A stretch of 47,275 nt of DNA from Ginglymostoma cirratum (lineage: Eukaryota), in NCBI GenBank assembly GCA_024137785.1, contig JAHRHZ010000085.1:1925941-1973215 (forward strand), written 5' to 3'. Under the pieces are notes generated by a model that had not been told where the DNA came from, did not search any database, and worked only from the letters and a program-made list of their open reading frames with translations. This document shows, piece after piece, positions 11,201-47,275 of this stretch. Made by a program: the position numbers and the translations under genes. How positions within the stretch are numbered: the stretch's first letter is position 1; every line of letters begins with the position of its first letter.

Positions 11201-11797
11201 TGGTAGAGGGATTGAGTTTCGGAGCCGTGAGGTCATGTTGCAGCTGTACAAAACTCTGGTGTGGCCGCAGTTGGAGAATTGTGTACAGTTCTAGTCCCGC
11301 ATTAAAGGAAGGATGTGGAAGCATTGGAAAGGGTGCAGAGGAGATTTACCAAGATGTTGCCTGGTATGGAGGGACGGTCTTATGAGGAAAGACTGAGGGA
11401 CTTGAGGCTGTTTTCATTAGAGAGAAGAAGGTTAAGAGGTGACTTAATAGAGACATACAAGATGATCAGAGGATTGGATAGGGTGGACTGTGAGAGCCTT
11501 TTTCCTCAGATGGTGATGGCTAGCACGAGGGGACATAGCTTTAAATTGAGGGGTGATAGATATAGGACAGATGTCAGAGGTAGGTTCTTGACTCAGAGTA
11601 GTAAGGGCATGGAATGCCTTGCCTGCAGCGGTTGTAGACTCGCCAACTTTAAGGGCATTTAAATGGTCATTGGATAAACATATGGATGATAATGGAATAG
11701 TGTAGGTTAGATGGGCTTCAGATTGGTTTCACAGGTCGGCGCAACATCGAGGGCCGAAGGACCTGTACTGCGCTGTAATGTTCTATGTTCTGTGTTC
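8245..11797 (+). mobile_element. CR1 element B: young, 5'-truncated, ORF1 esterase + ORF2 APE-RT, inactivated
   Basis: ORF1 has GDSIVRG, HIGTND and DGLH. ORF2 has YRPP, GDFN, SDHN, KSPGPDG, KAFDKV, QGSVLGP and FADD. Stops occur at 9630, 10428 and 11190, with frameshifts. (TTCTATG)n-like tail at 11781-11797. Confidence 0.95.
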
Positions 11798-14140: not shown

Positions 14141-14545
14141 TTGGAAGAGGAGGAGCAACATTAATCTTCAGGCTAGCATGTTACAACCTTCTGGGCTCAA
14201 TATTGAGTTCGACACCTTTGGATTGTGAACCCATTTCCCATTCCTTCCCTTTCTTTTAGCTTTACTTGTTACATTCTCTGTCACCATATCCTCTCTCCCC
14301 TCCCCCCAGCTCCAGTGTGACTGTCTGTTCTTTCCAGTCTGTCAGTTACATGCACCATTGTTTTGACTTTCTCACATTCTGATCACTTAATCTGAACTAT
14401 CAACGTTCTTTCTCCTCCAGCACTCCAAAATCCCCCGCCCCTCACTCTTGCATAAATGCTGTCCCCTTCCCACTTCACGTCAGCTCTGATGAAGAGTCAT
14501 CTATCCTCGAAATGTTAGCTTGATTTCTCTCCCTGGATTTTCAAA
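14141..14545 (+). mobile_element. Penelope-like element 3' end (GIY-YIG C-terminus + terminal repeat)
   Basis: LQPSGLNIEF motif followed by a repeat homologous to 43033-43390. Confidence 0.8.
14482..14520 (+). ncRNA. Minimal type I hammerhead ribozyme motif
   Basis: AGCT CTGATGA A GAGTCATCTATCCTC GAAA T GTT AGCT: stem I AGCT/AGCT, stem II GAG/CTC. Confidence 0.65.
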
Positions 14546-14549
14546 AGTT

Positions 14550-15300
14550 GATTGAGGTCAACTATTTACAGGTAAAGGAACGGCTGGAAAGAGGGAGGCC
14601 TTTTAAAATGAGATAATGAAAGTCCAGAGACATGTTTTCCTTTTACGGTGAAGGGCAAAGCTGGTAGGTGTGGAGAATGCTGGATGGCTACAGAAATTGA
14701 GATTTTGATCAAGAAAAAGAAGGAGGCATATGTCCGGTATAGACAGCATGGATCGAGTGAATCCCTAGAAGAGTATAAGATCCAACCATTCCATGCCGAA
14801 CATAATTCCAACCTAAACCAGTCCCACCCTTCTGCTCCTGACCCATATCCCTCTAAACCCTTCCTATTCATGTTCTTATCCAAATGTCTTTTTGACATTG
14901 TAGTTGTACCCACATCCACCACTTCCTCAGCAAGTTAATTCCACACACAAATCACCCTCTGTGTAAAAAAAAAAGCCTCTCACATTTTTTTTTAAAATCT
15001 CTCTCCTCTCACATTAAAAATGTGCCCCCTAGTCTTGAAATCCCCTATCCTAGGGAAAATACAGCTACCATTAACTCTATCTATAGCCCTCATTATTTAA
15101 TGAATTTCTATCCGGTCACCACTCAACATCCTACAGTCCAGTGGAAAAACTCCCAGCCTATTCAGCATTTCTTTATAACTCAACCTTTCCATACCTGGCA
15201 ACATCCTCGTAAATCTCTTTTGCACCCTCTTCAGCTTAATAATATCCTTCCTTTCACTGGACCACCAGAACTGGACACAGCATTCTAGAAGAGCCCAACT
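14550..15300. mobile_element. CR1 fragments (+ 14550-14778; - 14779-15300, 3' end)
   Basis: LIKKKKEAYVRY on the + strand; KRHLDKNMNRKGLEGYG 3'-end signature on the - strand. Confidence 0.8.
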
Positions 15301-16435
15301 CTCTTCATAACTAAGGTCAAGCGTAGAAAACCAACAACTTCAAACTGAGGGATTCATTTTATTGTCAAGCGGCAGACTGGAAGTAATATTTTTCCATTGT
15401 TGAATTTTACAGGACAATAGAACAGGTTTCATACATGTGTGTCAAACTCAGAATCTTAGTTAGAAAATATACTTGCAATTTTCCAAGCATTTACCCTGCC
15501 GTAAAATGGGCCATCCATTTGGATGTGCTTCTTAATATAAATACCGCCCACATTTCATTGAAATGCGACATACCAAGTTTAGTGTAAATCAAACATTGAA
15601 AACTTATTACATTATCTCCAAAGTAAATACATTTAAAGTCACACATGAAGGTAACATTACACTGATATCTCGCACCTTTTTCGATTCATACCCAATCACT
15701 GCAGCAAAAGTAACTTTATGGAGATAAATATGAATTAATACAAATTAATCATTCATTATTAGGAACGATGTCTGAAATGCGTGCCTTGAGCCCTCAGCCA
15801 AAGTAACCTATGAATGGAAAAATGCTTTAATCAGAATGACCTATTATTTGGTGGTAAGTACATCTTATCTAATGTTTAAAAGCGATGGTTAATATATACT
15901 CGAGTAAGTGTGAAACAAATAGGCTTTTTGGTGCTTTCAACCACATCCGTCCATCAGACTCAATTATTCTGTGATCTGTTTGAACTCAAGCTAATTGCCA
16001 GTACTGACACTGGTAGGTCAAAGCGAATTGATTTGTTGACGAAAAAGATGAGATCAAAATATAACAGTTTTTTTGCTTTATATAATGCATTTAAAGACAC
16101 CAATGCAAGCTGCTAGTTTTCTTTAATTTGCTTCATAGTTTCTTTTCATCACCCATAACCAGCACTTCCTGCAAAGAGGCAGAATCTCACAAATCATTCA
16201 TGAACACTGAGCAAAACCAATTATTGGTGACCCAATGTCCGTCCTGTCTTGCATATATTCATTCACGTAATTTGGTAACTCATCAGAAGGTATAATATTT
16301 TTAAGTTTTATCTCGACATATTTGGCAATAAAGTGAACTTTGTGCATTTAAATAAATCTATGAAATGGAGCACTGAAGCAGTGGGATAGTCCTGATGAAA
16401 TAAAAACAAGAATATACATTTGCACTACCAAGTCT

Positions 16436-18360
16436 TAACTAAGAAGGCATATGGCATGCTTGCCTTCATCGCCTGGCGCATGGAGTACAAGAGTTGGCAA
16501 AACATGTTGCAGCTATATAAAACTCTTGTTAGGCAGCATTTGGAAAATTGTGTGCAGTTTTGGTCACCTCACGACCAGAAGGATGTGGAAGCTTTGGAGA
16601 AATTTGTGACCGGTAAATCATGCCTCACAAGCCTTATTGAATTCTTTGAAGAGGTGACCAAATACGTGGATGAAGGTAGAGCAATGGATGTGGTGTACAT
16701 GGATTTATGTGAGGCATTTGATAAGGTTCCCCACGGTAGGCTCATGCAGAAGGTAAGGAGGCATGGGATGGGGGGAAATGTGGCAGATTGGATTCAGAGT
16801 TGGCTAACCCTTCGAAGACAACGGGTGGTAGTGGACGGAAAATATTCAACATGGTGCTCAGTTACGAGTGGAGTACCACAAGGATCTGTTCTGGGTCCTC
16901 TTCTATTTGTGATTTTTGTAAATGATTTGGATGAAGGAATGGAAGGGTGGATTAGTAAGTTCGCAGATGATACGAAGGTGGGTCAAGTTGTGGATAGTGC
17001 GGAGGGCTGTTCTAGGTTACAAAGGGACATTGGTAGGATGCAAAGCTGGGCTGAGAAGTGGCAGATGGAATTTAACCCTGAAAAGTGTGAGGTGATTCAT
17101 TTTGGAAGGACAAACTTGAAAGCAGAATACAGGGTTAACAGTAAGATTCTTGGCAGTGTGGAGGAGCAGAGGGATCTTGGGGTGCATGTCCATACTTACC
17201 TGAAAACTGCCACCCAGGTGGATAGAGTTGTTAAGAAGGCGTACAGTGTGTTAGCTTTCATTAGTAGAGAGATTGAGTTCAAGAGCCATGAAGTTATGCT
17301 CCAGCTATACATAAGCCTGGTTTCGGCCACATCTGGAGGATTGTGTCCAGTTCTGGTCGCCTCATTACAGGAAGGATGCAGAAGCATTGGAAAAGGTGCA
17401 GGGGAGATTCATCAGGATATTGCCTAGAATGGAGGGAAGGTCTTACGAGGAAAGGTTGAGAGAGCTAGGGCTTTTCCCTTTAGAACGACGAAGGATGAGA
17501 GGTGACTTGATAGAGGTATACAAAATGATCAGAGGTATAGATAGAGTGGACAGCCAGAGACTTTTTCCTAGGGTGGAGGTAGCTATTACGAGGGGGCATA
17601 GTTTTAAAGTGAGTGGAGGTAGATATCAGGGAGACGTCAGAGGTAGGTTCTTTACTCAGAGAGTGGTAGGGGTGTGGAATGCATTGCCGGAGAGGATAGT
17701 GGAGTTGGCCTCATTGGCTACATTTAAGCGGGTATTAGATAGGCATATGGATGATAGTATAAGGTAGGGGTGGAGGTTAGATAGATCTTAGGTTTCGGGT
17801 AAAAGTTTGGCACAACATCGTGGGCTGAAGGGCCTGTACTGTGCTGTACTGTTCTATGTTCTATGTTCTAAAGTACAGAGAAGGTTCACCAAGATGTTGT
17901 CTGGTCTCCAGGGCACTGGCTATGAGGAAAGGTTAAAAAGACTAGAATTGTTTTCACTGAAAAGATGGCAGCTGAGAGGAGACCTGATAGATGTATACAC
18001 TATTATGAGAGGCATAGATAGGGTGGATAGTCAGATGCTTCTTTTTCCCCAGGGTTGAAGTTTCAATTACCAGGAGGCACAGGTTCAAGGTCAGAGGGGG
18101 AAAGTTTAAGGGGAAGGTGCAATGGAAATTTTTTTACTCAGAGAGTGGTAGCAGCCTGGAATACACTACCAGAAGAGGTGATGAAAGCAGGCACATTGAA
18201 GACATTTAAGAGGCACCTAGATGGGTTCATGAATACGGAGGGAATAGAGAGATACCGATCAAAAAATGACAAGTTTGTTTTTATATTAATTAGGGCATGA
18301 TGGTCGGCACAGGCTTGGGGGCAGGGCAATGGGCCTGTTCCTGTGCTGTCCTTTTTCATT
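16436..18360 (+). mobile_element. CR1 element C 3' part, with nested younger CR1 element D (16602-17870)
   Basis: C reads ..DVEALE|KVQRRFTK across the insertion. D carries the RT (QGSVLGP, FADD) and a (TTCTATG)n tail ending near 17870. Confidence 0.93.
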
Positions 18361-29384: not shown

Positions 29385-30768
29385 AACATAGAAACATAGA
29401 AATATGAATGAGAGGAGTAGGAGGAAGCCATTTGGCCCTTTGAGTCTGTTGCTGCATTCTTCACCTGAATTCAGTAGCCTAATCCTGCTTTCTCCTCATA
29501 ACCTTTGATCCCATTCATCCCAAGTGCTATATCTTGTCACCTCTTCACTACATTCAATGTTTTAGCATCACCTACTTCCTGTGGTGATGAATTACACAGG
29601 CTTACGACTCTTTGGGTGAACAAATGTCTCCTCATCTCAGTCCTAAATTGTCTACCCCAAATCCTCATACTATGACCCCTGGTTCTGGAGACACCCACCA
29701 TCAGGAACATTCTCCCTGCATCTACCCTGTCCAGTGCTGTTAGAATTTTATAAGACTCTATGTCTCTTTATAAGCCTCATTCATCTGAACTCTTGCGAAA
29801 ACAATCACAACCTAGTCAATCTCTCCTCAGATGTCAGACCTGCCATCCCTGCAATCAGCCTGGTAAACCTTCGCTGCACTTCCTCGAAAGCAAGGGGATC
29901 CTTTCTCAGAAATGGAGCCCAAAATTGCCCACAATATTCCAGGTGTGGTCTCACCAAGGCCCTGTATAACTGTAACAACACATCCCTGCTCCTGGCCTTG
30001 AAGCCTCTTGTAATGAAGGCCAATATACCATTTGCCTTCTTTAGCACCTGCTGCACCTGCATGCTTACCTTCAGTGATTGGTGCACAAGGATGCCTAGGT
30101 CCCGCTGCAAACTCCCTTCGCCCAATTCACAATCATTCAGGTAGCATTCTGCCTTCTTGTTTTTGCTTCCCCAGTGAATAATCTCACACTTATCCAAATT
30201 ATACTGCATCTGCCAATGATTCGCCCATTCACCCAACCTGTCAAGACGATGCTGAAGGATCTCTGCATCCTTATCACAGTTCACCCTTCCACCCAACTTG
30301 GTATCATCTGCAAACTTGGAGATGACGCATTTTGTTCCCTCATTCAAATCATTAATATATATTGTGAATAGCTGAGGTCCCAGGACCGATCCCTGTAGCA
30401 CCCCACTGGTTACTGCCTGTCAATTTGAAAAGGACCCATTAATTCCTACCCTTTGTTTCCCTTCTGCCAGTTTCATACCCATCTCAATACACTTCCCCCA
30501 ATCTCACACACTTTAATCTTGCACATTAATGTCTTACGTGGAACTTTGTCAAATGTTTTCTGAAAGTCCAAATATACTGCATTGACAGGCTCCCCTTTGT
30601 TAACTCTACTAGCTACATCTTCATAGAATCCCAACAATTTTGTCAAGCATGATTTCCCTTTCATAAATCCAGGTTGATTCTGTCTGATCCTGCCACTGCT
30701 TTCTAAACGTTCTGCTATAAAATCCTTGACAATGGATCGGAGAATTTTCCCCACTACTGATGTTAGGC
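29385..30768 (-). mobile_element. CR1 RT-to-3'-end fragment
   Basis: ORFs 29805-30401 (QGSVLGP, FADD) and 30473-30772 (YLDFQKTFDKV). Confidence 0.92.
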
Positions 30769-31019
30769 CCATCCCTAATTGCCCGAAGGGTTGTTAACAG
30801 CCAACCACATTGCTGTGGGACTGGGGTCACATGCTGGCCAGACCCAGTGAGGATAGCAGATTTCCTTTCCTGAAAGGACATTAGCAAACCAGATTCTTTT
30901 TTGACAATCTGCCATGGTGGATTAGCTGGGGCTATGGATTAGTAGTCTAGAAATAATACCAAAAGGTTCTCTCCTCACATGTCCCACGAGTGAAAAAAAT
31001 CTGTCAGTGCCATCAACCA

Positions 31020-31240: not shown

Positions 31241-32022
31241 GAGAGGAAGAAAGTATTACAGTGTTGCATTTACCCAGGAATATGAAATTCTTCAAATGAA
31301 AACATATTTGTTGCAGTCAGCTCATGTTTGTATCTCCTAGATATTGACATCAAGACTTAGTAGAAGAGATAAACTGGGGTAAATTTCCTTTTCACAATGC
31401 ATTTAGGTTGAGACTTTCTAAGCCACGAGCTTTTTTGATAGAATAACTAAGGAGCAATAATATCGAATGACTGATAAGTTTGTTATAAGAAGGTTACTGT
31501 CACTCCAATATGCAAAAAGGGACGTAGAGAGAAAACAGGGAATTATAGACGGGTGAGCCTAACATCAGTGGTGGGGAAAATTCTCCAATCCATTGTCAAG
31601 GATTTTGTCCAGCCAAAGATACCACCCACATTTGGTGAATGAGTAAAAACCAAAATACCTGAACAGTACTTCAAGACCTGCCACAGTCCTTAAAGTGAAA
31701 TGCTGTTAGGTGAATCGATCTTAGTGAAATGATAGAGAAAATAATTGAGGTACCAAACATCTTCTTCAGTTCGCCCTTGCTTTTTTGTTAAACTATCAGA
31801 AATGATGCCATTGTTCTCCCTTCTGGCTGCTACCACACTGTGTCACCTATCATTACACTATTGAAACAAGTGCTATTTCATTCATTTAAACAAAAGGGTC
31901 GTTTCAAATGTTTTGTCCATGGTGGAATTATGTTATGCATTCTATTGAATTTAATGACAGTATCCTTGATGACCTGCTTGGTATTACTGACTTTTGACTA
32001 TCTCAGGTAATTAAACTTGTAC

Positions 32023-32340
32023 CTGCTTTGGAATATGTAATAACAGAAGTAACAATGGCAGGAGTTCCGAACGTGATATTAGAGACTAGGTGGATGTAAG
32101 CAATCCATTTTGAGCAGATTGTCTTTTTATCAAAAGCTGCAAGCTTCTTACAGTCCATCTGAATTTTGCTGCCTTCTGACAGACATACCATCTGTGATCT
32201 CAACGTCATTTTTAAACCAGACAAAGTCAATGACCTCTGGGTAAAATGCGTGTGCTTCCAATGCAAGGGGCAATGATGAATACCGCAGAGATTCTCTGGA
32301 GAAAAATTGCTCTGGCTGTTAAAATAATGTGAATTAGAAC
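32023..32340 (-). pseudogene. Decayed C1-set Ig exon, paralogous to the + strand receptor
   Basis: Minus strand reads ..AFYPEVIDFVWFKNDVEITDGMSVRRQQNSDGL*EACSF*, then after a frameshift AYIHLVSNITFGTPAIVTSVITYSKA. Both canonical Cys are lost. It ends in phase 1 at G|GTACAA, the same donor hexamer as the intact C1 exon. The 5' boundary is uncertain (32315 or about 32340). Confidence 0.8.
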
Positions 32341-37124: not shown

Positions 37125-38920
37125 AATTGTAAATACATTATGGATAATAGGCTAACTAGGGAGAGAATAGGGCCCCTTAAAAATCAGCAAGGCCATATTT
37201 GCGTGGAACCACAGGGTTTGGAGGAGATACTAAATGTGTATTTTACAACAGTGTTTACAGTGGAGAAGGATATGGGAGATAGAGAACTTGGGGAAATAAA
37301 TAGTGACTTCTTGAAAAATGTCCGTATTACAGAGGAGGTGCTGAATGTCTTAAAATGCATAAAAGTGAATAAATCCTTGGACCTGATCAGGTTCACCCTA
37401 GATCTCTGTGGGAAGCTGGGTAAGTGATTGCTCTGCCCCTTGCTGAGATATTTGTACTATCGAAAGCCACAGGTGAGGTGCCTGAAGATTGGAGCTTGGT
37501 CAACGTGGTGCCACTATGTAAGAAAGGTAGTAAGGAAAAGCCAGGGAACTATAGAGTGGTGAGCCTAACATCAGCGGTGTGCAAATTGTTGGAGAAGATA
37601 TTGTGCAACAGGATTTACATGCGTTTAGAAAGGCAAGGCCTGGTTAGCGACAGTCAACATGGCTTTGTGTGTGGAAAATCATGTCTCACTAACTTGATTG
37701 AGTTTTCTTGAAGAAGTAATGAAGAGAATTGATGCAGACAGAGCAGTGGAAGTGACCTATATGGACTTCAGTAAGACATTCGACAAAGTTCCTTATGGTA
37801 GAGTGGTTAGCAAGGTTAGATTTCATGGAATACAGGGAGAATGAGCCATTTGGATACAGAACTGGCTCAAAGGTAGAAGACAGAGTGTGGTGGTGAAGTC
37901 TTGTTTTTCAGGCTGGAGGCCTGTGACCAGCAGTGTGTCACAAGGATTGGTACGAGGTCCACTGCTTTTTGTCATTTATATAAATGAATTGGATATGAAC
38001 ACACGAGGTATGGTTAGTAAGTTTGTAGATGATGCCAAAATTGGAGGTGTAATGGATAGTGAAGGAGGTTACCACAGAGTACAACGGACCTTGATCCTGC
38101 TAATGGGCAGATGAGTAGCAGATGGAATTCAGTTTAGATAAATGTGTGATGCTGCATTTTGAAAGGCAAATCAGGGCAGGACTTATACACTTAATGATAA
38201 GATTAATGGAGATGGTGCCGAACAAAGAGAACCTGAAGTACAGGTTCATAATTCCTTGAAAGTGGAGTCACGGATAGTCAGGATAGTAAAGAAGGCATAT
38301 GGTATGCTTGCCTTTATTGGTCAGCACATTGAGTATAGGAGTTAGGATGTCACATTGGTTAGGCCACTTTGGAATACTGTGTACAATTCTGGTTTCCCTG
38401 CTATAGGAAGGATGTTGCAAAACTTGAAAGGGTTCAGAAAATATTTACAAGGATGTTGCCAGTGTTGAAGGGTTTCAACCACAGGGATAAGCTGAATAGA
38501 CTGGGCCTATTTTCCCTGGAGTGTCGGAGGCTGAGGGGTGACCTCCTATAGGTTTATAAAATTATGAGGGGCATGGAAAAGGTGAATACCAAGGTCTTTT
38601 CCTGGGGTGGTGGAATCCAAAACTAGACCTCATAGTTTAAAGGTGAGAAAAGAAAGATTTAAAAGGGACTTAAGGGGCGACCTTTTCACTCAAAGGGTGG
38701 CACATGTGTGGAAAGAGCTACCAACGGAAGTCGTGGTGGCTGTACAATTACAAAATTTAAAAGACATCTGGATGAGTATATGAATAGGAGGGGTTTGGAG
38801 GGATATGGGCCAAATGCTGGTAAATGGGATAAGATTAATTTAGGACTTCATGTCGGCATGGACAATTTCGACCGAACGGTCTGTTTCCATGCTGTACAGC
38901 TCTATGACTCTCTGACTCTA
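37125..38920 (+). mobile_element. CR1 ORF2 fragment to 3' end
   Basis: VPEDW..KPGNYR..SCLTNLIEF, SKFVDD and EYCVQFW motifs with a 3' UTR. Confidence 0.92.
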
Positions 38921-39450
38921 AATGTCTAAAGCTTACACAAAATAAATCAGTTAGAAACTGATTTTCCTGAATTCCATCAAAGTTATATATTTCATTTCAT
39001 ACATATGAACATTGTATGAGATGGCTTTCATTGTTTCTTCATTGGTTTAAAGATTGCTGTACAATATGAAGCAAAAACTTTCAAAGGTTCAAGTTCACTG
39101 CACAACCCTAGTGGAATTTGAGTCACAGCCAGCAGTTGGTTTTGGTTGATAACTTGCAATCATTTGTTCTCATTTGTATGATATGATGGCCAATGGTATT
39201 GATTTTACTGAAGTCCCTACATTACCTCACCACTTACTATCAGGGACAATTAATTCACCTTAGGGGTGTGATCTAAACCCTTAGATTTACTTTTACATCA
39301 GATTCTTTGCAATGACGTTTTGCTCAAGTTGCAATTTGCTTTTCAGATGTAGGTGTAGCTGTAGTTCATAGATCTAAAAATAAAATCTATTATTGAAAGC
39401 ATTTCCAGCTTCTTTCGTCACTATCAGTCAATTTCAGCCTTGTTCTCCGT

Positions 39451-39456
39451 TATAAA
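39451..39456 (+). promoter_or_regulatory. Candidate TATA box of the IgSF receptor gene
   Basis: TATAAA 29 bp upstream of ATG 39480 and 62 bp upstream of ATG 39513. Confidence 0.3.
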
Positions 39457-39479
39457 TTCCAAAGCTTCAGAGGTACCTG

Positions 39480-39558
39480 ATGTGCATCATCTTGCCAATT
39501 CCATTTCTAAGTATGTTGGTGCTGCCCTGGCTATTGGCTATGGAGGTTATTTACACAG
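39480..39558 (+). CDS. IgSF VJ-C1-TM receptor, exon 1 (signal peptide)
   Basis: ATG at 39480 opens MCIILPIPFLSMLVLPWLLAMEVIYT (hydrophobic). It ends in phase 1 at CAG|GTATTT (donor 39559) and joins in frame to the V exon (G+AT = Asp, DAQIRVSQTP). An alternative ATG at 39513 has A at -3. Confidence 0.75.
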
Positions 39559-39944
39559 GTATTTTCATTTGTTATGTTATTGAGAGCAAAAATGCAGCAG
39601 ATGTTGAAAATCTATTTTTAATTTCAATTTTGTGATTAAAACATTTTTGGTTATTGTTGAATGTATTTTCACTCAGAATTGTTATGCAAGGTCTGAGATT
39701 AAAATGTGAGGATAAATGTAAGATTATGTCTGATTCTGATCAATGATACCAGCATAATGAGATGGTAAGACCACCAAAGTGTTTTTCAACAAAGGATCGC
39801 ACCAGCTCCTTGATCAAAACTCTTTGCTACTGTGCTTATGTCTAAGGATATTGTGGAGGTTTTACAGGCAAAATTTTTAATTGTCTTTCCAAAATGATGC
39901 GTTACCCTCGCAGTTTCATTGACTGATGTGAAAATTGAGCATGT

Positions 39945-40640
39945 CACAGAGTCAGATTCATACAGCACAGAAACAGATCGGTCCAACAAGTCTTTGCTGA
40001 ACATAATCCCAAATTAAACTAATCACACCTGCCTGCTCCTGGCCCATATCCCTCCAAACCTTTCCCATCATGTACTTATCCAAATGCCTTTTAAACATTA
40101 TCATCATACCCACTTCCACCACTTCCTCAGCAAATTAATTCCTCATGCAAACCACACTCTGTGTATAAACTTTGTCCCGCACGTATTTATTAAATCTCTC
40201 ACTTCTCTCCTTAGTGCTCCCTAGTCTTGAAATCCCTTACCCTAGGGAAATGACAGTTACCATTAAGTCTATCTGCACCCCTCATTATTTTGTAAACTTC
40301 TATAAGGTTGCCTCACAACTTCCTACGCTCCAGTGAAAAGAGTCCCAGCCTTTCCAGAGATTGTAGGAACTGCAGATGCTGGAGAATCTGAGATAACAAG
40401 ACGTTGAGCCTTTCTAGCCTTTCTTTATAACTCAAACCTTCCATACCAGCAACATCCTGGTAAATCTCTTCTGAATGCTTTCCATCTCAATAATATCCTT
40501 CCTATAACTGGGCAACCAGAACTGGACACAGCATTCAAGAAGAGGCCTCACCAATGTCCTGTCGAACATCAACATGACTTCCCAACTTAAAGGACTGAGC
40601 AATGAAGGCAAGCATACTAAAAGCCTTTTTAATCACCCTG
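39945..40640 (-). mobile_element. CR1 3' fragment in intron 1 (contains a ~50-bp PLE piece at 40357-40406)
   Basis: Homologous to 14779-15300. The insert matches 2783-2826. Confidence 0.85.
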
Positions 40641-41431
40641 TGTATGTGTGGTACCTGCTGAATTATACTCTTACAAAACAATTGCGGATGTTAGTTTTTG
40701 AAGGTTTTTTTGTGATCAATCTTAGTAAATGCACAGCAATATAGTTTGCATAAACATGTCAGTAGTTGTAAGTTGTACACAAAGAAGCACATAGTTGAAA
40801 AATAAAAATCAGGGCTTCAGCCAAGACAATAACCAGGCTGATAAATATAATGTTACATAGACACAAAGAGTGTGATGACATTGATAAGAATAACCACATG
40901 GGAGTGCATATCTAGGATGTTCAACTGTACAAAGCTATTATCTAGTTCATCTGACCATGAGTGCACTAAGATTATTTCTAAATTAATTAGTGTGTTAGGA
41001 TATATTAAGGAGCTAATTCAACAATAAAACTGAATACAAAGCAATTCAAAGACTTATCTGGGTGGCAGCAGCAACATGTCATTTGATATGCTCTTTCTCC
41101 AATGTACTGAACCTGATCACCTCAGCAAATGCAATCTAAAATGCATTATTATGCTCTGGCCTTCAGAAATGTTCGGTTTTAAGAATGTACATGATATCGT
41201 ATTGCGTGGCAATTGCATAACGGCATGGCAGATATGAACTGTTAAAAGGAAGTTGTTTTAGATAGCATATTTAGTGCTGGTAGTATTCAATTGTACTCAA
41301 TTAATGCTCAAAGCACGCATTTGATCATCAGGAAACATTCCATAATCCACAAGTCAATGATAATTGCTGCATGATATATGGCTTCAGCATCACTAATTGC
41401 AGTTGCATTTATTTGGTCACTGTCGATACAG

Positions 41432-41743
41432 ATGCTCAAATAAGGGTATCCCAAACTCCCAAATATGCCAACACGATCGCAGGTGGAACCATTCGTCTCT
41501 ATTGTGCATTCCCTCTTTACAATGAGCCTTCAGATGTGAATGTCTATTGGTGGAAACTCGGAAACAATCATTTTCTGCAGTCAAATGAAGGCAACAGAAT
41601 ACAATTTCTTCGTTTGAGGAAGGGTGAGGCTATTTTACAGCTGCTGAATATCAGCCATGATGACTCTGGACTTTATTACTGTGGTGTGAGACATTCTGAT
41701 AATCGATTTGTAAATGGGACTGGATCAAAGCTTGTTATCTACG
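41432..41743 (+). CDS. IgSF receptor exon 2: V-set domain with germline-joined J-like G strand
   Basis: Acceptor TACAG|, donor |GTAAGT at 41744; 312 nt, phase 1-1. Encodes AQIRVSQTP..IRLYC..VYWWK..AILQLLNISHDDSGLYYC..VNGTGSKLVIY, with B-strand Cys, C-strand Trp, DxGxYYC and a GxG J motif. Confidence 0.95.
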
Positions 41744-42504
41744 GTAAGTGGAATGTCCACATTAAATTATTTCACAAACACACAGAAAAAATAAAACCAA
41801 GCACATGTCTGTTCTGTAAGATTTTATGGTGGTTCATATTTGGGTCTTCCAAGAGTTTAATTCATACCTTTTAGAATTTAGTTAAAATTCTTATTCATTG
41901 ACACAGTCTGCTTCAATTGATTTATGAAATGAACAGGAACTAAATACAATATTTGACAAAGTATCACAAAGTCACATAATTGCTAGATTTAACTAAACAT
42001 GGTGTATTTTAGAGAGTGCAAAATTTTCACTTCCCACAGCAAATCTGTCACTGGAATGAAAATATTGTGGAAAAATCTTTATGTTTATGGTAAGTGACTC
42101 GTGAAATTGAAATCTCTATCTTTCTTTCAGCAGAATTTTTATTTTAACTGCAGAGCCCTCTGCAACATTCCTGGTTCCATGTTTTCCCTTTATATGATGA
42201 TGAAGCTTTTTGCATTGTCAAACCTGAGCCTTTTTTATACAGTGATGAATAATTATTTCAAAACTGTCTTTGAAATCAAGTTTATTGCATTTTCTGTCGC
42301 ATTTGTAAGCCAAAACTAAATCTAATTTTGATTAATGTGCTTGGGATACTATTTAAAACAGCATTTAAAGAAATTGATCATGCTTACAATTTTGTTTCTA
42401 TTAAGCATTTATACCTGCTACATACAAAGAATTTCAACCTATGTTTATCATTCAATTATTTTAAATCTACATTTGAAGGTGTCTCCAATGTTTCCTACTT
42501 ACTA

Positions 42505-43030
42505 ACGTAGGAACAGAGGAGCTGGAGGAGGATTTTCAGCATCTTGAGTCCACTCTGTCATACCAGATCACAGCTGATCACATTGGTCAATAGCATATTC
42601 ACACAATATCGCCATGATGACAGCAGTAACTCAAAATCTATAAATCTCTGCCTTGAACTTATTGAATGAAATCTGCAGCACTCTAGGGTAGAGAATTCCA
42701 AAGATTCACCGCCATCTCAGTGAAGAAAATTCTTCCTCATCTCAGTCCTAAATGTTTTATAATTTTTTTTGAGACTGTGGCACTTAGTTCTTCAGTCCAT
42801 AACAAGGAGAAGCATCCCTGTTTTTGTCAGTTTCTACCAAGTTGCCTATCGTTCTTTTTATCTCCAGAGAATTTAGGCTTAGTGTCCTTCATGTCTCCCT
42901 GTAGGACGTTCCCACCTTCCCAGGAATCAACCTGATTAAACTCCACAGCGCTCACTTTATGGCAAGTATATCCTTACGCAAAGGAAACACAACTCCACAC
43001 AATACAGTACTCAAGATGTGGTCTCACCAG
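42505..43030 (-). mobile_element. CR1 3' fragment in intron 2
   Basis: Degenerate similarity to 34715-35280. Confidence 0.65.
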
Positions 43031-43032
43031 TG

Positions 43033-43390
43033 CTGAAAACAAAAAATGCTGGAGATCACTACAGGTCAGACAGCATCCATGGAGAGAAAACAAACTAACA
43101 TTTCGAGCCTAGACAGCTCTTCATCAGGGTTGAAGTGAAGTGTTTAGGGGGACAGCATTTATGCAAAAGTGGGGGATTCGGAGGAGGTGTTGGAGTGCTG
43201 GGGGAGAAAGGATGTTGATAGCTCAGATTAAGTAATTGGAATGTGAGAATGGCAGAACATTCTATGTCTAACTGCCAGACTGGAAAGAACAGACAGTCCC
43301 ATTGGGTGGAGGTACGGGAGAGAGGACATGGTGACAGAGAATGTAACAATCAACACTAAAAGAAGGGAAGGAATGAGCTCACAATCTTTC
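43033..43390 (-). mobile_element. PLE terminal repeat in intron 2
   Basis: Reverse complement of 14225-14540. Confidence 0.8.
43093..43131 (-). ncRNA. Minimal type I hammerhead ribozyme motif
   Basis: AACC CTGATGA A GAGCTGTCTAGGCTC GAAA T GTT AGTT: core intact, one stem I mismatch. Confidence 0.6.
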
Positions 43391-43789
43391 AATTTATCTT
43401 TGTTGTTGTCTGTAATTAGTATTTGGAGCTGCTCAGTGATGAAGCAGAAGATTGGCACCAGATAGCATAAGTGCTGCTGTTAGCAGATTGTAGACAGTTA
43501 GGGGTCAGGAGGAAACACTGGTTCTGTTCTATGGAAATAACATTGGTGCTGAACTCAAGCCCGGGAGCCACTAACTGTTAATTGTATCTGCCAGTGAACA
43601 TGAGGGATCTGAGATGTGTAATTTGCATGAAGCAGCTTGCTAATTAAAAAAAGTTATGAACTTCAACAAATTCAGCAACAGCTCATTGAAGATATCTGTT
43701 TAATAAAAACTGAGATTGTTCCAATGATTAGATGCATGCAAGCAAATTGGGAATATTACATCAGTCACTATATCCAAACCACTTATACA

Positions 43790-45050
43790 GATCATGAACA
43801 TTAGGGGTCCAAGCAGTGATCCATGTGATACTGTTCTTACTATGAACCTGTGAATTGTCTTTTTATTCATGTTCTCTATCTATATTATGACCAGTTCTGC
43901 ACACTTTAGTTATATTTAATAACCTTCCAAGTGGGATTTCATCAAAAGCCTTCTGAAAATTGAAATACATCAAATCCAACAGTTTCACAGTTTGATTCTG
44001 CCTGGACTATTCTCAATAAACTCTATCAGGTTTGTAAAACATGAGTCTGCTGCCTTTAATCTATGTTAACAGTGTCCAATCTCACCATTATTGTCAAATT
44101 AATGGGCCTGTTTTCGCTCTTCATCTTGTTTTAATTATCGACTTTAAACCTACAACCTTCTAACATACATGCACAGTTGAAGAATTAATAGAAACCTTAA
44201 AGATGATTATCTCTGTAGCCACCTCTTTCAACTCCTTAGGGTGAAGGTCATTGCCATAATTTGTCCATTATCTGTCCTATTAATTGCTCCAATGCTACTT
44301 TTTTAAAATTGATATTAATATATCTTAGTTCTACATGGTCACTAGACTATCAGATCTTCATTATTTCATTTCCTCTCTTAAGACAGACAAAAGCTCCTTA
44401 CTTTGCATTTCTATGAGTCCTCTGTTCAAAATTATCTCTTCCTGTAACGGGCCTACAATTGTTCCTGCTAATCTTTCCTTTTTAGGTACCTCAAGAAGGT
44501 TTTACAGATCATTTTTATTTTTCTTCTAATTTCAAATTCAGATTCTAATTTCAAATTCTTTATAAATCCTTTGGTCCTCCTTTACCGAAATCTAAACGCC
44601 TCTGAACCTTCACATTTGCAACTTTTCGTGACAACTTTATAAGCCTCATCCTTTGATGAAATATGATCTTATTGCTTTTAATGTTCATTGTTAGCCCTGC
44701 CCCCTTCACTTCTTCTGTTGAATATTTTTGACCCAAAAGGATATATATATTTTCTTAAGTCACCCATGATTACAGCTTCCACATTTCTATATGTACTGCC
44801 TTAAATTTGAGCTGCAGTTTATATAAATCTCAATACCTCTGTTGGCAATTCTTGCTGTTTCTTAGCTCCACAGATCCATCCTTTTTTTCCAGATTGGATC
44901 CTTGTCACATCCTTCTCACTAATATTCTGAGTCCATCACTTACCTCAGTCCAACTCACCTCTGTACCTTTTTTTTGCCTATTCCTCCTAAATGTCAAATG
45001 TGCTTTAACATTCAGCCTCTCATTTTGGTCATTATGCAGCAACGCCTCCA
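43790..45050 (-). mobile_element. Highly degenerate CR1 ORF2 in intron 2
   Basis: The minus strand retains LMYFNFQKAFDEIP- and GSLLGP-like motifs. Confidence 0.55.
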
Positions 45051-45561
45051 TAATGACAATATATTATATCCTTTTATTTCCACTAACCCATGATTTCACC
45101 TACCTGTTGTGACCACCGTGCACTAATCATTTTGCACCAGTATTACTGAAGATATTATTATATATTTTCCAATGGTCTCATTTTTTTAATCCTTTTATTT
45201 ATTACACATACTTTATATTCTTGTGGAATGTTAGTTCTGTGTTTTCTATTTTCCACACAGACTGATCACTGAAATAAATCATGAAAGTTACATATAAATT
45301 AACAGACATAATTATTTTATAGTGTACTTTCATATTGTGTGCATCAGTGTCCAATTATCATCTCTACTTTCTTAAGTCCTACGCTTGATGGTGCAAAAGG
45401 AAAATCTTTGAATTGGTATCTCCTTTTAGCTTTATATAAAGTACAATGCCATTTGATATGTGTTAAGTTTTCATGTCACGTTGACCTTGATCTATCAGAA
45501 AATGAATAATTTTCAACATTCTTACTAAGTTTACATCTCTTCTGTAACTTTTTTTTAACAG

Positions 45562-45870
45562 TTCCCCCGCGTCAACTGCATATTGATTGCCACAAGACTG
45601 AACACAATGCATCAACGTATCTGGTTCTCATTTGTGAAAGTGTTGAATTTTACCCAGGGAATATAAGTATCAGTTGGTACAAGAATGGTGTGAATGTTGA
45701 CAATGGGATAAACACAGTTCTAAAGTTAAGTGCAGAAGGTCTGTTTGAATGTTCCAGCACTTTTGAAGATAAAGAACCTGTTAAAGATGGGACTTTCTAC
45801 ACCTGCAAATTATCTTATCTCACAATTGAAATGACCACCACCTACCAATTTTCTTCAACCAGCAATGACG
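45562..45870 (+). CDS. IgSF receptor exon 3: C1-set domain
   Basis: Acceptor TTTTTTTTAACAG|, donor |GTACAA at 45871; 309 nt, phase 1-1. Encodes VPPRQLHIDC..LVLICESVEFYPGNISISWYKNG..GLFECSS..FYTCKLSY, with the C1 hallmark C-xxxx-FYP-xx-I-x-I-x-W-x-K-N-G and YTC. Confidence 0.93.
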
Positions 45871-46944
45871 GTACAAATAATATTTGTAACGAATGGAAAA
45901 TAATATCTGATGAATACATGTATGTAGTTAACCAGGTTAAATCTCAGAACTAATGGAAGAAAAAGGGTCACGCATTCAAATTTTACATTGAATCCCATGT
46001 CTCAATTTTGCTTCAGTTCATGCTCAGCAAATCACCGACACTGGTGAAGCCAAGAATTACTTTCTGACTTAAGTTTCCTTTGAAAGCCTTGCAGGATATA
46101 CTGTGTGAAGTGTTTTAATTTAGAATTATGTGCATTACAGTGCTGTCAAGCAGAAAGGGCCCATTTTTTTCAACATCACTATTGATGATGAAATATGGAT
46201 ATGTGTCTAATGGTTGAAGGACAATTAGGAGTAAGATATCAAATCACTATTTTCTGATTTCTATGTAGCCACACTTGTCATGTAATATCCTAGTCAATCC
46301 ATGATATTTTCCGAGCTCTTTTAAAAGCACAACAATAGCTTTTCCATCTTGAATTGAACCATAACGTGGGTTAATTCAACATTGCAAATTTATTTTTTAA
46401 CAGTTTTCTTTGGAAAGCTGGGCTGCACTATATTTTTATTGTGATATGGAAAGATTGGTACCAATTGAGGGCTGGAATACTGCTCTTGCAATGCCATTCT
46501 GAGAATAATATTACAACATGCTAGAAATAAGGGTCAGTAACAATGGCATGTTCAGCTCCAGAAGGTACCTAGTTGATTCACAAAATATGATGCGTGATCT
46601 TGAAGAAAGTTCAAAATACAATTCATTGTTGAAATGATGTATCGTTGTAATGTTAAAATGCAAGCATGACCTCTTTGAATACTGTTCAGTGCTAGTATCT
46701 CTTTTTAAATTTGCAATATTAACACTTTATTGTTATCATACATAATGCATATTAATATCACATATTAAAGCAGCACTTGAAATGGGTAGAAAAGTGACTA
46801 ACAACATACTTGGCATTCCTTCAAAGCATTGCAGCCCCAGAAAATTTGGATATGTTTTCAAAATAATAGCCGGAGACATTGAGAAGTGGGAATGGATAAT
46901 GCTGTTTTACAACATAAATCTTATTTTTGATATTTATTTTACAG

Positions 46945-47058
46945 AAGATAACAGCATATTTTGGTACATAAAGGTGTATGGATCAGCAGGAGGTGGAATC
47001 TTGATTTTATTGTTTCTAATAGTAATGCGGAGGAGACATCCTTTGACATCATGTAAAG
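46945..47058 (+). CDS. IgSF receptor exon 4: transmembrane exon
   Basis: Acceptor TTTATTTTACAG|, donor |GTACAA at 47059; 114 nt, phase 1-1. Encodes EDNSIFWYIKVYGSAGGGILILLFLIVMRRRHPLTSCK (hydrophobic helix plus RRR stop-transfer). The gene may continue beyond the window. Confidence 0.88.
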
Positions 47059-47201
47059 GTACAAAATAGTTCAGTTGATTTCAGTTCCAATTGCTCCTTC
47101 AAGTTCATTCATTAGGGAAGGACACTTTGGAAGGCACTAAGGTACTTTGATTGAGGTAGCTGCTCTCTAAAATCAGAATATTAAATGAGAAAAGTAAGCA
47201 A

Positions 47202-47275
47202 AGATAACAAGGTGTGGGGCTGGATGAACACAGCAGGCCAAGCAGCATCATAGGAGCAGGAAAGCTTGACGTTTC
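47202..47275 (-). mobile_element. PLE-derived short element, cut by the window end
   Basis: Matches 2818-2890 and 28425-28498. Confidence 0.8.

What the first reader, a model, noticed from the sequence alone, without database searches (positions are those of the whole stretch)
39480..47058. Non-rearranging antigen-receptor-like gene: leader / germline VJ / C1 / TM
Seen: four exons with canonical GT-AG sites, all joined in phase 1, giving an open L-V-C1-TM protein. The V exon contains its own J-like G strand (YYC..VNGTGSKLVI) with no intervening RSS. Known: VJ plus C1 is the architecture of Ig light chains and TCR chains. Among non-rearranging genes, NKp30 and the CD28 family have VJ without C1, B7-H6 and tapasin have V-C1, and SIRP has VJ-C1-C1. 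Inference: this is a member of a poorly characterised cartilaginous-fish VJ-C1-TM receptor family resembling the pre-RAG-insertion ancestor of antigen receptors. The ORF track misses the leader, the 5' part of C1 and the exon joins.
Basis: partly seen in the sequence, partly recalled or inferred. Interest (0 to 1): 0.8.

Follow-up and report, generated by a model that had tools for sequence, protein, structure and literature searches.

The report
Shark non-rearranging VJ-C1 membrane receptor gene
This is a real, spliced and transcribed shark gene for a membrane receptor built like one pre-joined T-cell-receptor or antibody light chain; it is one more copy of a large family of paired immune-type receptors that I found only in cartilaginous fishes, and no paper I could reach describes that family.

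Summary
Four phase-1 exons with GT-AG introns encode a leader, a V domain with its own J-like strand (NGTGSKLVI, no RSS), a C1-set domain and a transmembrane segment. Assembled transcripts from three studies show the V-C1 and C1-TM joints exactly as predicted. They continue 262-390 nt past 47058/47059, so the gene runs on beyond the finding and probably beyond the window.

The gene is not an orphan. Its closest relatives (47-58% identity per exon) are V-C1-TM proteins of about 16 sharks, rays and a chimaera, automatically named SIRP-alpha-like, NCR3LG1-like, Ig-lambda-like or tapasin-related-like. Every relative with a C1 domain whose source I checked was chondrichthyan.

The family has long-tail ITIM forms and short-tail forms with an arginine in the membrane segment, so it looks like a paired inhibitory/activating receptor family. 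This copy has the ITIM-type membrane exon, but its tail is unseen.

It works like SIRP but fails SIRP, UrIg and rearranging-receptor membership on domain number or RSS. The "pre-RAG ancestor" reading is untested.

The scan already found this family at other places in the same genome (other pieces, and 7 kb and 143 kb from this window). I file it as a new member of a known kind, of moderate interest.

The parts
39480..39558 (+). Exon 1: start codon and most of the signal peptide (26 codons plus 1 base, phase 1 donor)
   Evidence: Translation. GT donor at 39559. 55% identity to the leader of Heptranchias P0007. Transcript contigs carry 47-128 nt upstream of the V acceptor.
41432..41743 (+). Exon 2: end of the leader plus a V-set domain with its own J-like G strand (YYC...VNGTGSKLVIY); no RSS
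   Evidence: Translation. Pfam V-set 6.2e-10. AF2 model pLDDT 89.7 with V-type neighbours. No heptamer or nonamer. Covered by transcript contigs of X1, X2 and X3.
45562..45870 (+). Exon 3: C1-set constant-type domain (FYP motif, 13 residues between the B-strand Cys and the C-strand Trp)
   Evidence: Translation. Pfam C1-set 3.6e-9. PDB sequence hits to Ig CH/CL, UrIg2, IgNAR C and MHC II beta. AF2 model pLDDT 87.5 with top folds MHC II beta2 and IgNAR C1. RNA joint 41743/45562.
46945..47058 (+). Exon 4: stalk, transmembrane segment (VYGSAGGGILILLFLIVM) and the first cytoplasmic residues (RRRHPLTSCK); ends in a used phase-1 donor
   Evidence: Translation. 47% identity to the TM exon region of P0007. 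RNA joint 45870/46945 in X1 and X3. Contigs leave the genome at 47059 and go on 262-390 nt.
47059..47275 (+). Start of intron 4; the cytoplasmic-tail exons were not seen and probably lie beyond the window's end
   Evidence: GT at 47059. Transcript contigs do not match beyond 47059. A high-copy repeat occupies 47200-47275.
43895..44001 (+). Cryptic alternative exon inside intron 2, joined to the V exon in one run; it gives a V-only product that stops after 20 codons
   Evidence: Joint 41743->43895, GT..AG, in one contig of X2 with 30 nt on the shorter side. Reading frame.
32012..32318 (-). Dead C1 exon of the same family on the opposite strand (first Cys lost, at least four stops)
   Evidence: tblastn of the C1 exon, 2.6e-5. 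88 family proteins hit it, best 2.7e-9.

Best explanation
The locus is an intact-looking, transcribed gene for a type I membrane protein. The chain has a signal peptide, one V domain whose J-like strand is encoded in the germline V exon, one C1-set domain, a short stalk and a transmembrane helix, with a cytoplasmic tail encoded further downstream.

It belongs to a multigene family that I found only in cartilaginous fishes (sharks, rays, chimaera). The family has two kinds of members, the layout of paired inhibitory/activating immune receptors such as SIRP-alpha/beta:
- members with long tails carrying ITIM-type tyrosine motifs;
- members with short tails and an arginine at the start of the membrane helix.

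This copy has the membrane exon of the long-tail type. The most likely mechanism is this. The V domain binds a still unknown ligand, possibly as a C1-paired dimer. Tail tyrosines are then phosphorylated and recruit SH2 phosphatases that damp cell activation.

Shown: the exons, the splicing, the transcription, the domain types and the family membership.
Inferred: the tail and its ITIMs, dimerisation, the ligand and the cell type.
For: - Exons, phases and splice sites.
- Pfam V-set and C1-set above their cut-offs.
- Spliced transcript contigs from three studies, with both predicted joints and a 262-390 nt continuation past the TM exon.
- Exhaustive HMMER search with the V exon: every V-C1 protein among the best 150 carries the family hallmark xNG(T/S)G(S/T)xLxV followed by (V)PPTPL and FYP...W.
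- About 30 of these representatives looked up for a source name, and all 46 and 60 hits of the two word-based searches, are from chondrichthyans, about 16 species including Callorhinchus.
- Per-exon blastp against Heptranchias P0007: V 54% (5e-39), C1 49% (3e-34), TM 47% (2e-10), leader 55%.
- The V tree puts the window with P0007 and with galeomorph members, some of which carry the arginine membrane segment (SH-aLRT 84).
- Tail census of the family: ITIM-like (L/V)xYAxL motifs in long tails, and P/H-R-F-I-L membrane starts with 10-18-residue tails.
- The window's TM exon aligns with P0007's up to the shared ...CK|G exon end; P0007 then has a 116-residue tail with LTYAAL and SVYAQL.
Against: - The tail exons are not in the window, so the inhibitory assignment rests on homology of a 37-residue exon at 47% identity.
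- A lysine (YIKVYG) sits at the outer edge of the hydrophobic stretch, where P0007 has glutamine.
- The C1 domain departs from the family consensus: KLSY instead of xVSH after the F-strand Cys, and an extra Cys in GLFECSS.
- The V tip branch is long (0.48).
- A poly-A RNA run of the same organism shows almost no cover (X11), so expression is restricted or low.
- Runs X1-X3 are labelled RNA only by guess, although spliced contigs argue for cDNA.
- The restriction to chondrichthyans rests on the best 150 of one exhaustive search and on word-limited searches.
Confidence: 0.65

Rival explanations
1. The family is simply the cartilaginous-fish co-orthologue of SIRP (signal-regulatory proteins), having lost one C1 domain. 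The gene would then be a divergent SIRP, not a member of a separate family.
For: - NCBI's pipeline names many members 'tyrosine-protein phosphatase non-receptor type substrate 1-like' or 'SIRP beta-1-like'.
- The nearest ESM Atlas clusters of P0007 are SIRP clusters (0.96).
- The family profile hits SIRP-alpha 2wng at 3e-29 over V and C1, and SIRP-gamma at 2e-26.
- The logic is the same: ITIM tail versus charged membrane segment.
- One ray member has two C1 domains (P0045).
Against: - This gene has one C1 exon, joined directly to the TM exon in RNA; SIRP has V-C1-C1 (PMC2785349).
- The same profile scores an Ig lambda chain and UrIg2 as high or higher.
- Other members are named NCR3LG1-like, Ig-lambda-like, tapasin-related-like or CD276, so the automatic names show no consistent best hit.
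- No synteny or rooted tree was available.
Confidence: 0.2
2. This copy is an activating, adaptor-coupled receptor. The lysine in FWYIKVYG would pair with a DAP12-type adaptor, and the tail would be short.
For: A Lys lies at the N-terminal edge of the 24-residue hydrophobic stretch, and a basic RRRH follows the helix. The V domain is 55-58% identical to short-tail members of Carcharodon (P0008), Mustelus (P0193) and Chiloscyllium (P0190); the first two have the arginine membrane segment.
Against: - The arginine-type members use a different membrane exon (P/H-R-F-I-L-x-F-L-V-I-L), not YGSAGGG.
- The closest TM homologue has Gln at the Lys position and a 116-residue ITIM tail.
- The TM exon ends in a donor that is used, and transcripts go on 262-390 nt.
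Confidence: 0.12
3. The gene is a transcribed but decaying copy in a birth-and-death cluster, with no working protein.
For: - A dead C1 exon of the same family lies 7 kb upstream on the other strand.
- The locus is embedded in LINE debris.
- C1 departs from the family consensus at VSH, and the V branch is long.
- A cryptic-exon splice form exists.
- Depth is low, and near zero in a poly-A run.
Against: - All four exons are open.
- The canonical Cys, Trp, DxGxYxC, GxG, FYP and 13-residue Cys-Trp spacing are all kept.
- Splice sites are canonical and used in three studies.
- Both AF2 models are confident.
Confidence: 0.1
4. One reading: the family is a direct, little-changed descendant of the non-rearranging VJ-C1 membrane gene that the RAG transposon invaded, and is closer to Ig/TCR than SIRP, PRARP or UrIg are.
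For: The chain has the same VJ-C1-TM layout as an Ig light chain or a TCR chain, with phase-1 exons and a leader split between two exons. The best single stretch of the family profile in the PDB is the J-C part of a human lambda chain (63.8 bits). The family is present in both chondrichthyan subclasses.
Against: - The J strand lacks the F/W of FGxGT.
- The V domain is compact and has generic neighbours.
- UrIg2, already proposed as the candidate relative of the invaded gene and linked to Ig/TCR loci (PMC12227049), scores similarly.
- No linkage to the MHC or to antigen-receptor loci could be examined. None of the eight MHC-related notes shown for this genome (of 41 that matched) is on this piece (a lead only).
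- No outgroup-rooted tree was made.
Confidence: 0.08

Closest known systems
SIRP family (SIRP-alpha / SIRP-beta; PTPNS1)
   Same: Non-rearranging V domain with a GxG J-like strand, followed by true C1-set domain(s), then a TM. Family members come as an ITIM-tailed inhibitory form and a short-tailed form with a charged membrane residue. SIRP is the nearest named family by ESM Atlas and by many automatic names (PMC2785349).
   Different: SIRP has V-C1-C1; this gene has a single C1, joined directly to the TM in RNA. The charged residue in the family's short forms is Arg at the helix start, not the Lys of SIRP-beta (the SIRP-beta residue is from my own knowledge). CD47 binding, synteny and orthology were not tested.
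[quoted passage not shown] 2019, J Immunol 202:1992)
   Same: As I recall the abstract (the paper is not held): non-rearranging VJ, V-C1 layout in non-avian species, TM and a potential ITIM. It is listed among joined-VJ genes in PMC11599192 and PMC10751288.
   Different: As I recall, PRARP was described from bony fish to birds, not from cartilaginous fish. No bony-vertebrate V-C1 protein appeared among the best 150 exhaustive hits of this V exon. The reptile and frog hits were V-V proteins at about 30% identity. No PRARP sequence was available by reference, so orthology is untested.
UrIg and UrIg2 (elasmobranch non-rearranging Ig-like genes; PMC12227049)
   Same: Single-exon VJ, a leader split between two exons, C1-type constant domains, and elasmobranch origin. 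The C1 exon hits UrIg2 (9dmx) at 1e-9 and the family profile hits it at 1e-31.
   Different: UrIg has three C1 domains and is secreted. UrIg2 has nine to eleven C domains in sharks. Both are single genes linked to the MHC or to the Ig/TCR complex. This is a one-C1 membrane receptor from a multigene family with ITIM and Arg-TM forms.
Ig light chains and TCR chains
   Same: V-J-C1(-TM) chain layout, phase-1 exons and C1-set hallmarks. The best single PDB stretch of the family profile is a lambda J-C region.
   Different: V and J are one germline exon with no RSS, and the gene is expressed without rearrangement. The J strand lacks F/W. The family's tails carry their own signalling motifs.
NKp30 (NCR3) and other VJ-only receptors (CD79, CD8, NITR)
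   Same: Germline-joined VJ-type V domain on a membrane receptor. Some relatives of this family have lost the C1 exon and are VJ-TM-ITIM (P0060, P0062, P0067). CD79b is among the fold neighbours.
   Different: Those receptors have no C1-set domain.

Membership tests
Chondrichthyan VJ-C1-TM paired-receptor family (unnamed; automatic names SIRP-alpha-like, NCR3LG1-like, Ig lambda-1-like, tapasin-related-like, CD276) | V exon ending in the J-like strand xNG(T/S)G(S/T)xLxV, with canonical Cys, Trp and DxGxYxC | tested here: met
   The window has VNGTGSKLVIY, C24, W39 and DSGLYYC. These columns are invariant or nearly so in alignments A1 and A2.
Chondrichthyan VJ-C1-TM paired-receptor family (unnamed; automatic names SIRP-alpha-like, NCR3LG1-like, Ig lambda-1-like, tapasin-related-like, CD276) | C1 exon beginning (V)PPxxL, with FYP...W and YxC, directly after the V exon | tested here: met
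   V|PPRQLHI, EFYPGNISISW and YTCKL. 49% identity, 3e-34, to P0007's C1. RNA joins V to C1.
Chondrichthyan VJ-C1-TM paired-receptor family (unnamed; automatic names SIRP-alpha-like, NCR3LG1-like, Ig lambda-1-like, tapasin-related-like, CD276) | Significant whole-domain similarity to family members, above that to other Ig proteins | tested here: met
   V exon 5e-39 to 3e-41 against P0007, P0190, P0164 and P0193. The top single-V hits of the exhaustive search are all family members.
Chondrichthyan VJ-C1-TM paired-receptor family (unnamed; automatic names SIRP-alpha-like, NCR3LG1-like, Ig lambda-1-like, tapasin-related-like, CD276) | Either an ITIM-bearing cytoplasmic tail or an Arg-bearing TM with a short tail | tested here: inconclusive
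   The TM exon is of the P0007 (ITIM) type, but the tail exons lie outside the window.
SIRP | Ectodomain of one V-set and two C1-set domains | tested here: not met
   There is one C1 exon. The transcript contig joins 45870 directly to the TM exon at 46945. SIRP layout from PMC2785349.
SIRP | ITIM tail (alpha) or Lys-TM with DAP12 (beta) | tested here: inconclusive
   The tail is not in the window. A Lys sits at the edge of the TM. Homologues have ITIMs or an Arg-TM.
SIRP | Binds CD47; orthologous map position | not testable with these tools
   No binding assay was possible.
UrIg / UrIg2 | VJ followed by three or more C1-type domains | tested here: not met
   A single C1 exon lies between V and TM. 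UrIg has 3 C domains and UrIg2 has 9-11 (PMC12227049).
UrIg / UrIg2 | Linkage to the MHC (UrIg) or to the IgH/TCR-alpha-delta complex (UrIg2) | not testable with these tools
   The window has no marker genes. None of the eight MHC notes shown for this genome (of 41 that matched) is on this piece (a lead only).
Rearranging antigen receptors (IgL, TCR) | Separate V and J segments flanked by RSS, joined somatically | tested here: not met
   V and J are one open exon. No heptamer or nonamer occurs in 41300-41900. The germline form is what is spliced in RNA.
PRARP | Orthology to the chicken, reptile, amphibian and fish PRARP genes (VJ-C1-TM with ITIM) | not tested
No bony-vertebrate V-C1 protein was among the best 150 V hits.
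C1-set Ig domain (criteria of Hatherley et al. 2009, PMC2785349) | (F/Y)(F/Y/H)P at the BC loop, and exactly 13 residues between the B-strand Cys and the C-strand Trp | tested here: met
   C24...FYP...W38, with 13 residues between. Criteria read.
C1-set Ig domain (criteria of Hatherley et al. 2009, PMC2785349) | xVxH after the F-strand Cys | tested here: not met
   The window has C-KLSY. The family consensus is C-xVSH. This is a copy-specific departure.
C1-set Ig domain (criteria of Hatherley et al. 2009, PMC2785349) | C1-set fold | tested here: met
   AF2 model pLDDT 87.5. All top Foldseek matches are C1 domains: MHC II beta2 and IgNAR C1. Pfam C1-set is above its cut-off.

The most novel reading that the evidence does not exclude
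The chondrichthyan VJ-C1-TM family is a surviving membrane-bound lineage of the non-rearranging VJ-C1 receptor stock from which Ig and TCR chains arose. On this reading it is older than, and sister to, SIRP, PRARP and UrIg, and is still used as germline-encoded paired (ITIM / Arg-TM) receptors that pair through their C1 domains like a proto-TCR.
Probability: 0.1. Interest if true: 0.85.

Novelty: new member of a known kind. Interest (0 to 1): 0.45.

Why it matters
Single-exon VJ genes with C1 domains are actively sought as clues to how antibodies and T-cell receptors began (PMC12227049, PMC10751288, PMC2785349). Only a few such genes are described: SIRP, PRARP, UrIg and UrIg2.

This gene shows that sharks carry and transcribe a whole multigene family with exactly the one-chain layout of an antigen receptor (V-J-C1-TM), but wired as paired inhibitory/activating receptors. 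In public genomes the family sits under inconsistent automatic names, and no paper I could reach describes it.

If characterised, the family would add a chondrichthyan data point to the V-C1 phylogeny. It could also show what such receptors did before, or beside, rearrangement. As a single locus, though, this is one more copy of something the scan has already met several times in this genome.

Tried and rejected
- **Joined protein.** Every search, alignment and fold used the exons one by one by reference, or database proteins as proxies.
- **The look-up of encoding contigs.** I could therefore not see the exon structure, tail exons or neighbours of P0007.
- **Papers not held.** Fu et al. 2019 (PRARP) and Flajnik et al. 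2023 (UrIg) are not held. Searches for PRARP, for an antigen-receptor-precursor phrase, for SIRP in cartilaginous fish, and for shark paired ITIM receptors found no description of this family.
- **Outgroup-rooted trees.** These were not possible, because no SIRP, PRARP, UrIg, Ig or TCR sequences were available by id and I did not type sequences from memory. Only an in-family V tree was made.
- **Other copies in the window.** Only a dead C1 exon was found. The other tblastn hits came from reverse-transcriptase sequence wrongly fused into the model P0013.
- **Rfam and repeats.** Rfam and repeat scans of 39000-47275 found nothing.
- **Species.** It was not identified.
- **Third word-based protein search.** I left it unused. 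Its length filter would have excluded long-tail orthologues of a 103-residue query.
- **ESM Atlas on the V exon.** It gave only generic V-set clusters.

Full report
**1. What is in the sequence**

- Exon 1 (39480-39558) starts with ATG and encodes MCIILPIPFLSMLVLPWLLAMEVIYT.
- Exon 2 (41432-41743) encodes a 103-residue V domain that runs without interruption from AQIRVSQTP through LYCAF, VYWWK and DSGLYYC to VNGTGSKLVIY.
- Exon 3 (45562-45870) encodes PPRQLHI...LICESVEFYPGNISISWYKNG...FYTCKLSY.
- Exon 4 (46945-47058) encodes DNSIFWYIKVYGSAGGGILILLFLIVMRRRHPLTSCK.

The introns are 1873, 3818 and 1074 nt. All are GT..AG with pyrimidine-rich acceptors, and all are phase 1, giving junction codons D, V and E.

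Pfam calls exon 2 V-set (6.2e-10) and exon 3 C1-set (3.6e-9), both above the curated cut-offs. No RSS heptamer or nonamer lies in or next to the V exon.

All searches were made exon by exon, by reference.

**2. Is it expressed and spliced as predicted?**

The V exon was found in assembled contigs of eight public runs of two coded organisms. Three small runs of organism A, from three studies (X1, X2, X3), hold 58-85% of its words.

Laid on 41300-47275, their contigs show:
- the V-C1 joint 41743/45562 in X1, a 411-nt contig with 200 nt or more on each side;
- the C1-TM joint 45870/46945 in X1 and X3;
- both joints GT..AG.

Contigs that begin at the V acceptor carry 47 and 128 more upstream letters. 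That is enough for the 79-nt leader exon plus some 5' UTR.

Contigs that cover the TM exon stop matching the genome at 47059 and go on for 390 and 262 letters. The TM exon is therefore not the last exon: the tail is encoded downstream, probably beyond the window.

One X2 contig joins the V exon to a cryptic exon at 43895. This would give a V-only product ending after 20 codons, which I take for splicing noise.

A poly-A run of the same organism (X11) has almost no cover, so expression is low or tissue-restricted.

The runs are RNA only by guess. However, intron-less contigs with GT..AG boundaries in 100-200 Mb data sets of a multi-gigabase genome are hard to explain as DNA. It is supported by 55% identity of the leader to that of the closest homologue.

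**3. Domain types**

The AF2 model of the V exon (pLDDT 89.7) is a compact V-type sandwich. DSSP assigns no strands between C (35-41) and D (56-61).

Its Foldseek neighbours are shark vNAR domains (which I recall lack C''), NCAM domain 1, V-lambda, CD79b, TCR V-beta and PD-1. This is V-like but not diagnostic of any family.

The J-like strand keeps the GxG bulge (N-G-T-G-S) but has Asn where antigen receptors have Phe or Trp. N-G-T is also a glycosylation sequon, conserved through the family.

The C1 model (pLDDT 87.5) matches only C1 domains at the top: MHC class II beta2 and IgNAR C1.

Of the sequence criteria for C1-set in Hatherley et al. 2009 (PMC2785349):
- FYP is met;
- the 13-residue Cys-Trp spacing is met;
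- the xVxH motif is KLSY here, although it is VSH in the family consensus.

**4. Relatives**

An exhaustive HMMER search of 1.84 billion representatives with the V exon gave 287 hits.

Apart from giant multi-Ig proteins, whose scores are sums over many domains, the best hits are 220-420-residue proteins. They are 46-50% identical in the search table; per-exon BLASTP gives up to 58%. They share the whole layout: leader, V ending in xNG(T/S)G(S/T)xLxV, (V)PPTPLKI, a C1 domain with FYPE..LTWYKNG...GLYEVSS...YTCxVSH, and a TM.

The roughly 30 family representatives that I looked up are all from cartilaginous fishes. So are all 46 and 60 hits of the two word-based searches. The species are Heptranchias, Heterodontus, Carcharodon, Cetorhinus, Mustelus, Scyliorhinus (2), Chiloscyllium (2), Hemiscyllium, Pristis, Amblyraja, Mobula (2), Hemitrygon, Hypanus and the chimaera Callorhinchus.

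In several species the listed members lie on a single contig of that species. Their automatic names are inconsistent: SIRP-alpha-like, SIRP-beta-like, NCR3LG1-like, Ig lambda-1-like, tapasin-related-like, CD276, even class II beta-like. This shows that no characterised orthologue exists for the naming pipeline to find.

Non-chondrichthyan hits among the best 150 are V-V-TM-ITIM proteins of reptiles and Xenopus 'NCR3' models. They are about 30% identical and have no C1 domain.

The closest single protein is Heptranchias P0007: V 54%, C1 49%, TM exon 47%, leader 55%. In an in-family V tree the window groups, with modest support (SH-aLRT 84), with P0007 and a galeomorph set.

**5. What it probably does**

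A census of the family's C-termini (alignment) shows two kinds of member:
- long tails (65-200 residues) with one to three (L/V)xYAxL-type ITIMs and repeated TVYAQT-type tyrosines, behind uncharged membrane segments of the xGCAGGGLxFLLL kind;
- short tails (10-18 residues) behind membrane segments that start P/H-R-F-I-L.

This is the signature of paired inhibitory/activating receptors. V domains of the two kinds are close relatives.

The window's TM exon (YIKVYGSAGGGILILLFLIVMRRRHPLTSCK) aligns with that of P0007 (YIQVYGSAGVGILVVFLVIIIGKQCPLIKCK|G), down to the shared end of the exon. P0007 continues with a 116-residue tail bearing LTYAAL and SVYAQL.

I therefore read this copy as an inhibitory-type member. 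Its ligation would lead to tail phosphorylation and recruitment of SH2 phosphatases, as in SIRP-alpha.

This step is inferred, because the tail is not in the window. The Lys at the outer edge of the helix keeps a small chance for adaptor coupling. C1 domains normally pair with another domain (PMC2785349), so a homo- or heterodimer is plausible but untested.

**6. Comparison with known systems**

- By function and layout the nearest named family is SIRP. The gene fails the V-C1-C1 criterion, since a single C1 is joined directly to the TM in RNA. Orthology could not be tested.
- UrIg and UrIg2 (PMC12227049) share the single-exon VJ and C1 domains but have three to eleven C domains. They are single genes with defined linkage.
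- Rearranging receptors are excluded by the germline-joined, RSS-free V exon.
- PRARP (Fu et al. 2019) has, as far as I recall its abstract, the same VJ-C1-TM-ITIM layout in non-avian bony vertebrates. It is the family most in need of comparison. No bony-vertebrate V-C1 protein came up among the best 150 V hits.
- The family profile scores the J-C part of a human lambda chain (63.8 bits in one stretch), UrIg2 (1e-31 overall) and SIRP-alpha (3e-29) at comparable levels. Sequence similarity alone does not place the family.

**7. Surroundings**

The rest of the window is LINE debris: endonuclease and reverse-transcriptase ORFs at 9.1-18 kb, 29.8-30.8 kb and 37-38 kb.

One dead C1 exon of the same family lies on the minus strand at about 32.0-32.3 kb. 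Its first Cys is lost and it has at least four stops.

Earlier notes of this scan report further VJ-C1-TM genes 7 kb before the window and 143 kb beyond it, and several on other pieces of the genome. They fit a birth-and-death cluster, but I did not check them.

**8. Verdict**

It over-reaches on the ancestral-receptor claim and misses that the gene continues downstream.

The kind (non-rearranging VJ-C1 receptors; paired ITIM/charged-TM receptors) is known. The family is in public annotation but, as far as I could find, undescribed. The scan has met it before in this genome.

I rate it a new member of a known kind, interest 0.45. I give a 10% chance to the stronger reading that the family is a direct membrane-bound relic of the antigen-receptor precursor.

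Noticed in passing
window 32012-32318 (-): Dead C1-set exon of the same VJ-C1 family on the opposite strand. It reads ...LPLALEAHAFYPEVIDFVWFKNDVEITDG..., has lost the B-strand Cys and has at least four stops. No matching V or TM exon was found nearby.
   Followed up: partly
window 43895-44001 (+), inside intron 2: One transcript contig (run X2) splices the V exon to a cryptic GT..AG-bounded exon. The frame stops after 20 codons, giving a V-only product. Unspliced contigs also cover 43563-44278.
   Followed up: partly
window 47200-47275; also 2845, 2958, 22969, 26987, 27762, 28452: A short dispersed repeat (core CACAGCAGGCCAAGCAGCATC; 7 copies in the window, none expected by chance). It has enormous depth in all RNA data sets (summed word depth above 2x10^5) and many strand-switching reads. 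No Rfam match in 39000-47275.
   Followed up: partly
window 9135-18300, 29805-30772 (-), 37140-38114: Several broken LINE copies with apurinic-type endonuclease and reverse-transcriptase ORFs (Pfam Exo_endo_phos_2, RVT_1). One public protein model of the receptor family (P0013, Heterodontus) has such reverse-transcriptase sequence wrongly fused to its N-terminus.
   Followed up: partly
window 42700-43500 (intron 2): Stretch with RNA cover on both strands in all four runs (depth 10-50 in contigs) and odd internal joints. It is most likely a transcribed repeat, not part of the receptor mRNA.
   Followed up: no
window 39450-39457: ATAAAT (TATA-like) about 25-30 nt before the ATG. Transcript contigs seem to start at least 49 nt upstream of the ATG, so this is probably not the main promoter element.
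   Followed up: no
family proteins P0060, P0062, P0067, P0071, P0083, P0112: Some chondrichthyan relatives are VJ-TM-ITIM without the C1 domain, and one ray protein (P0045) has two near-identical C1 domains. The number of C1 exons is therefore plastic in the family.
   Followed up: no
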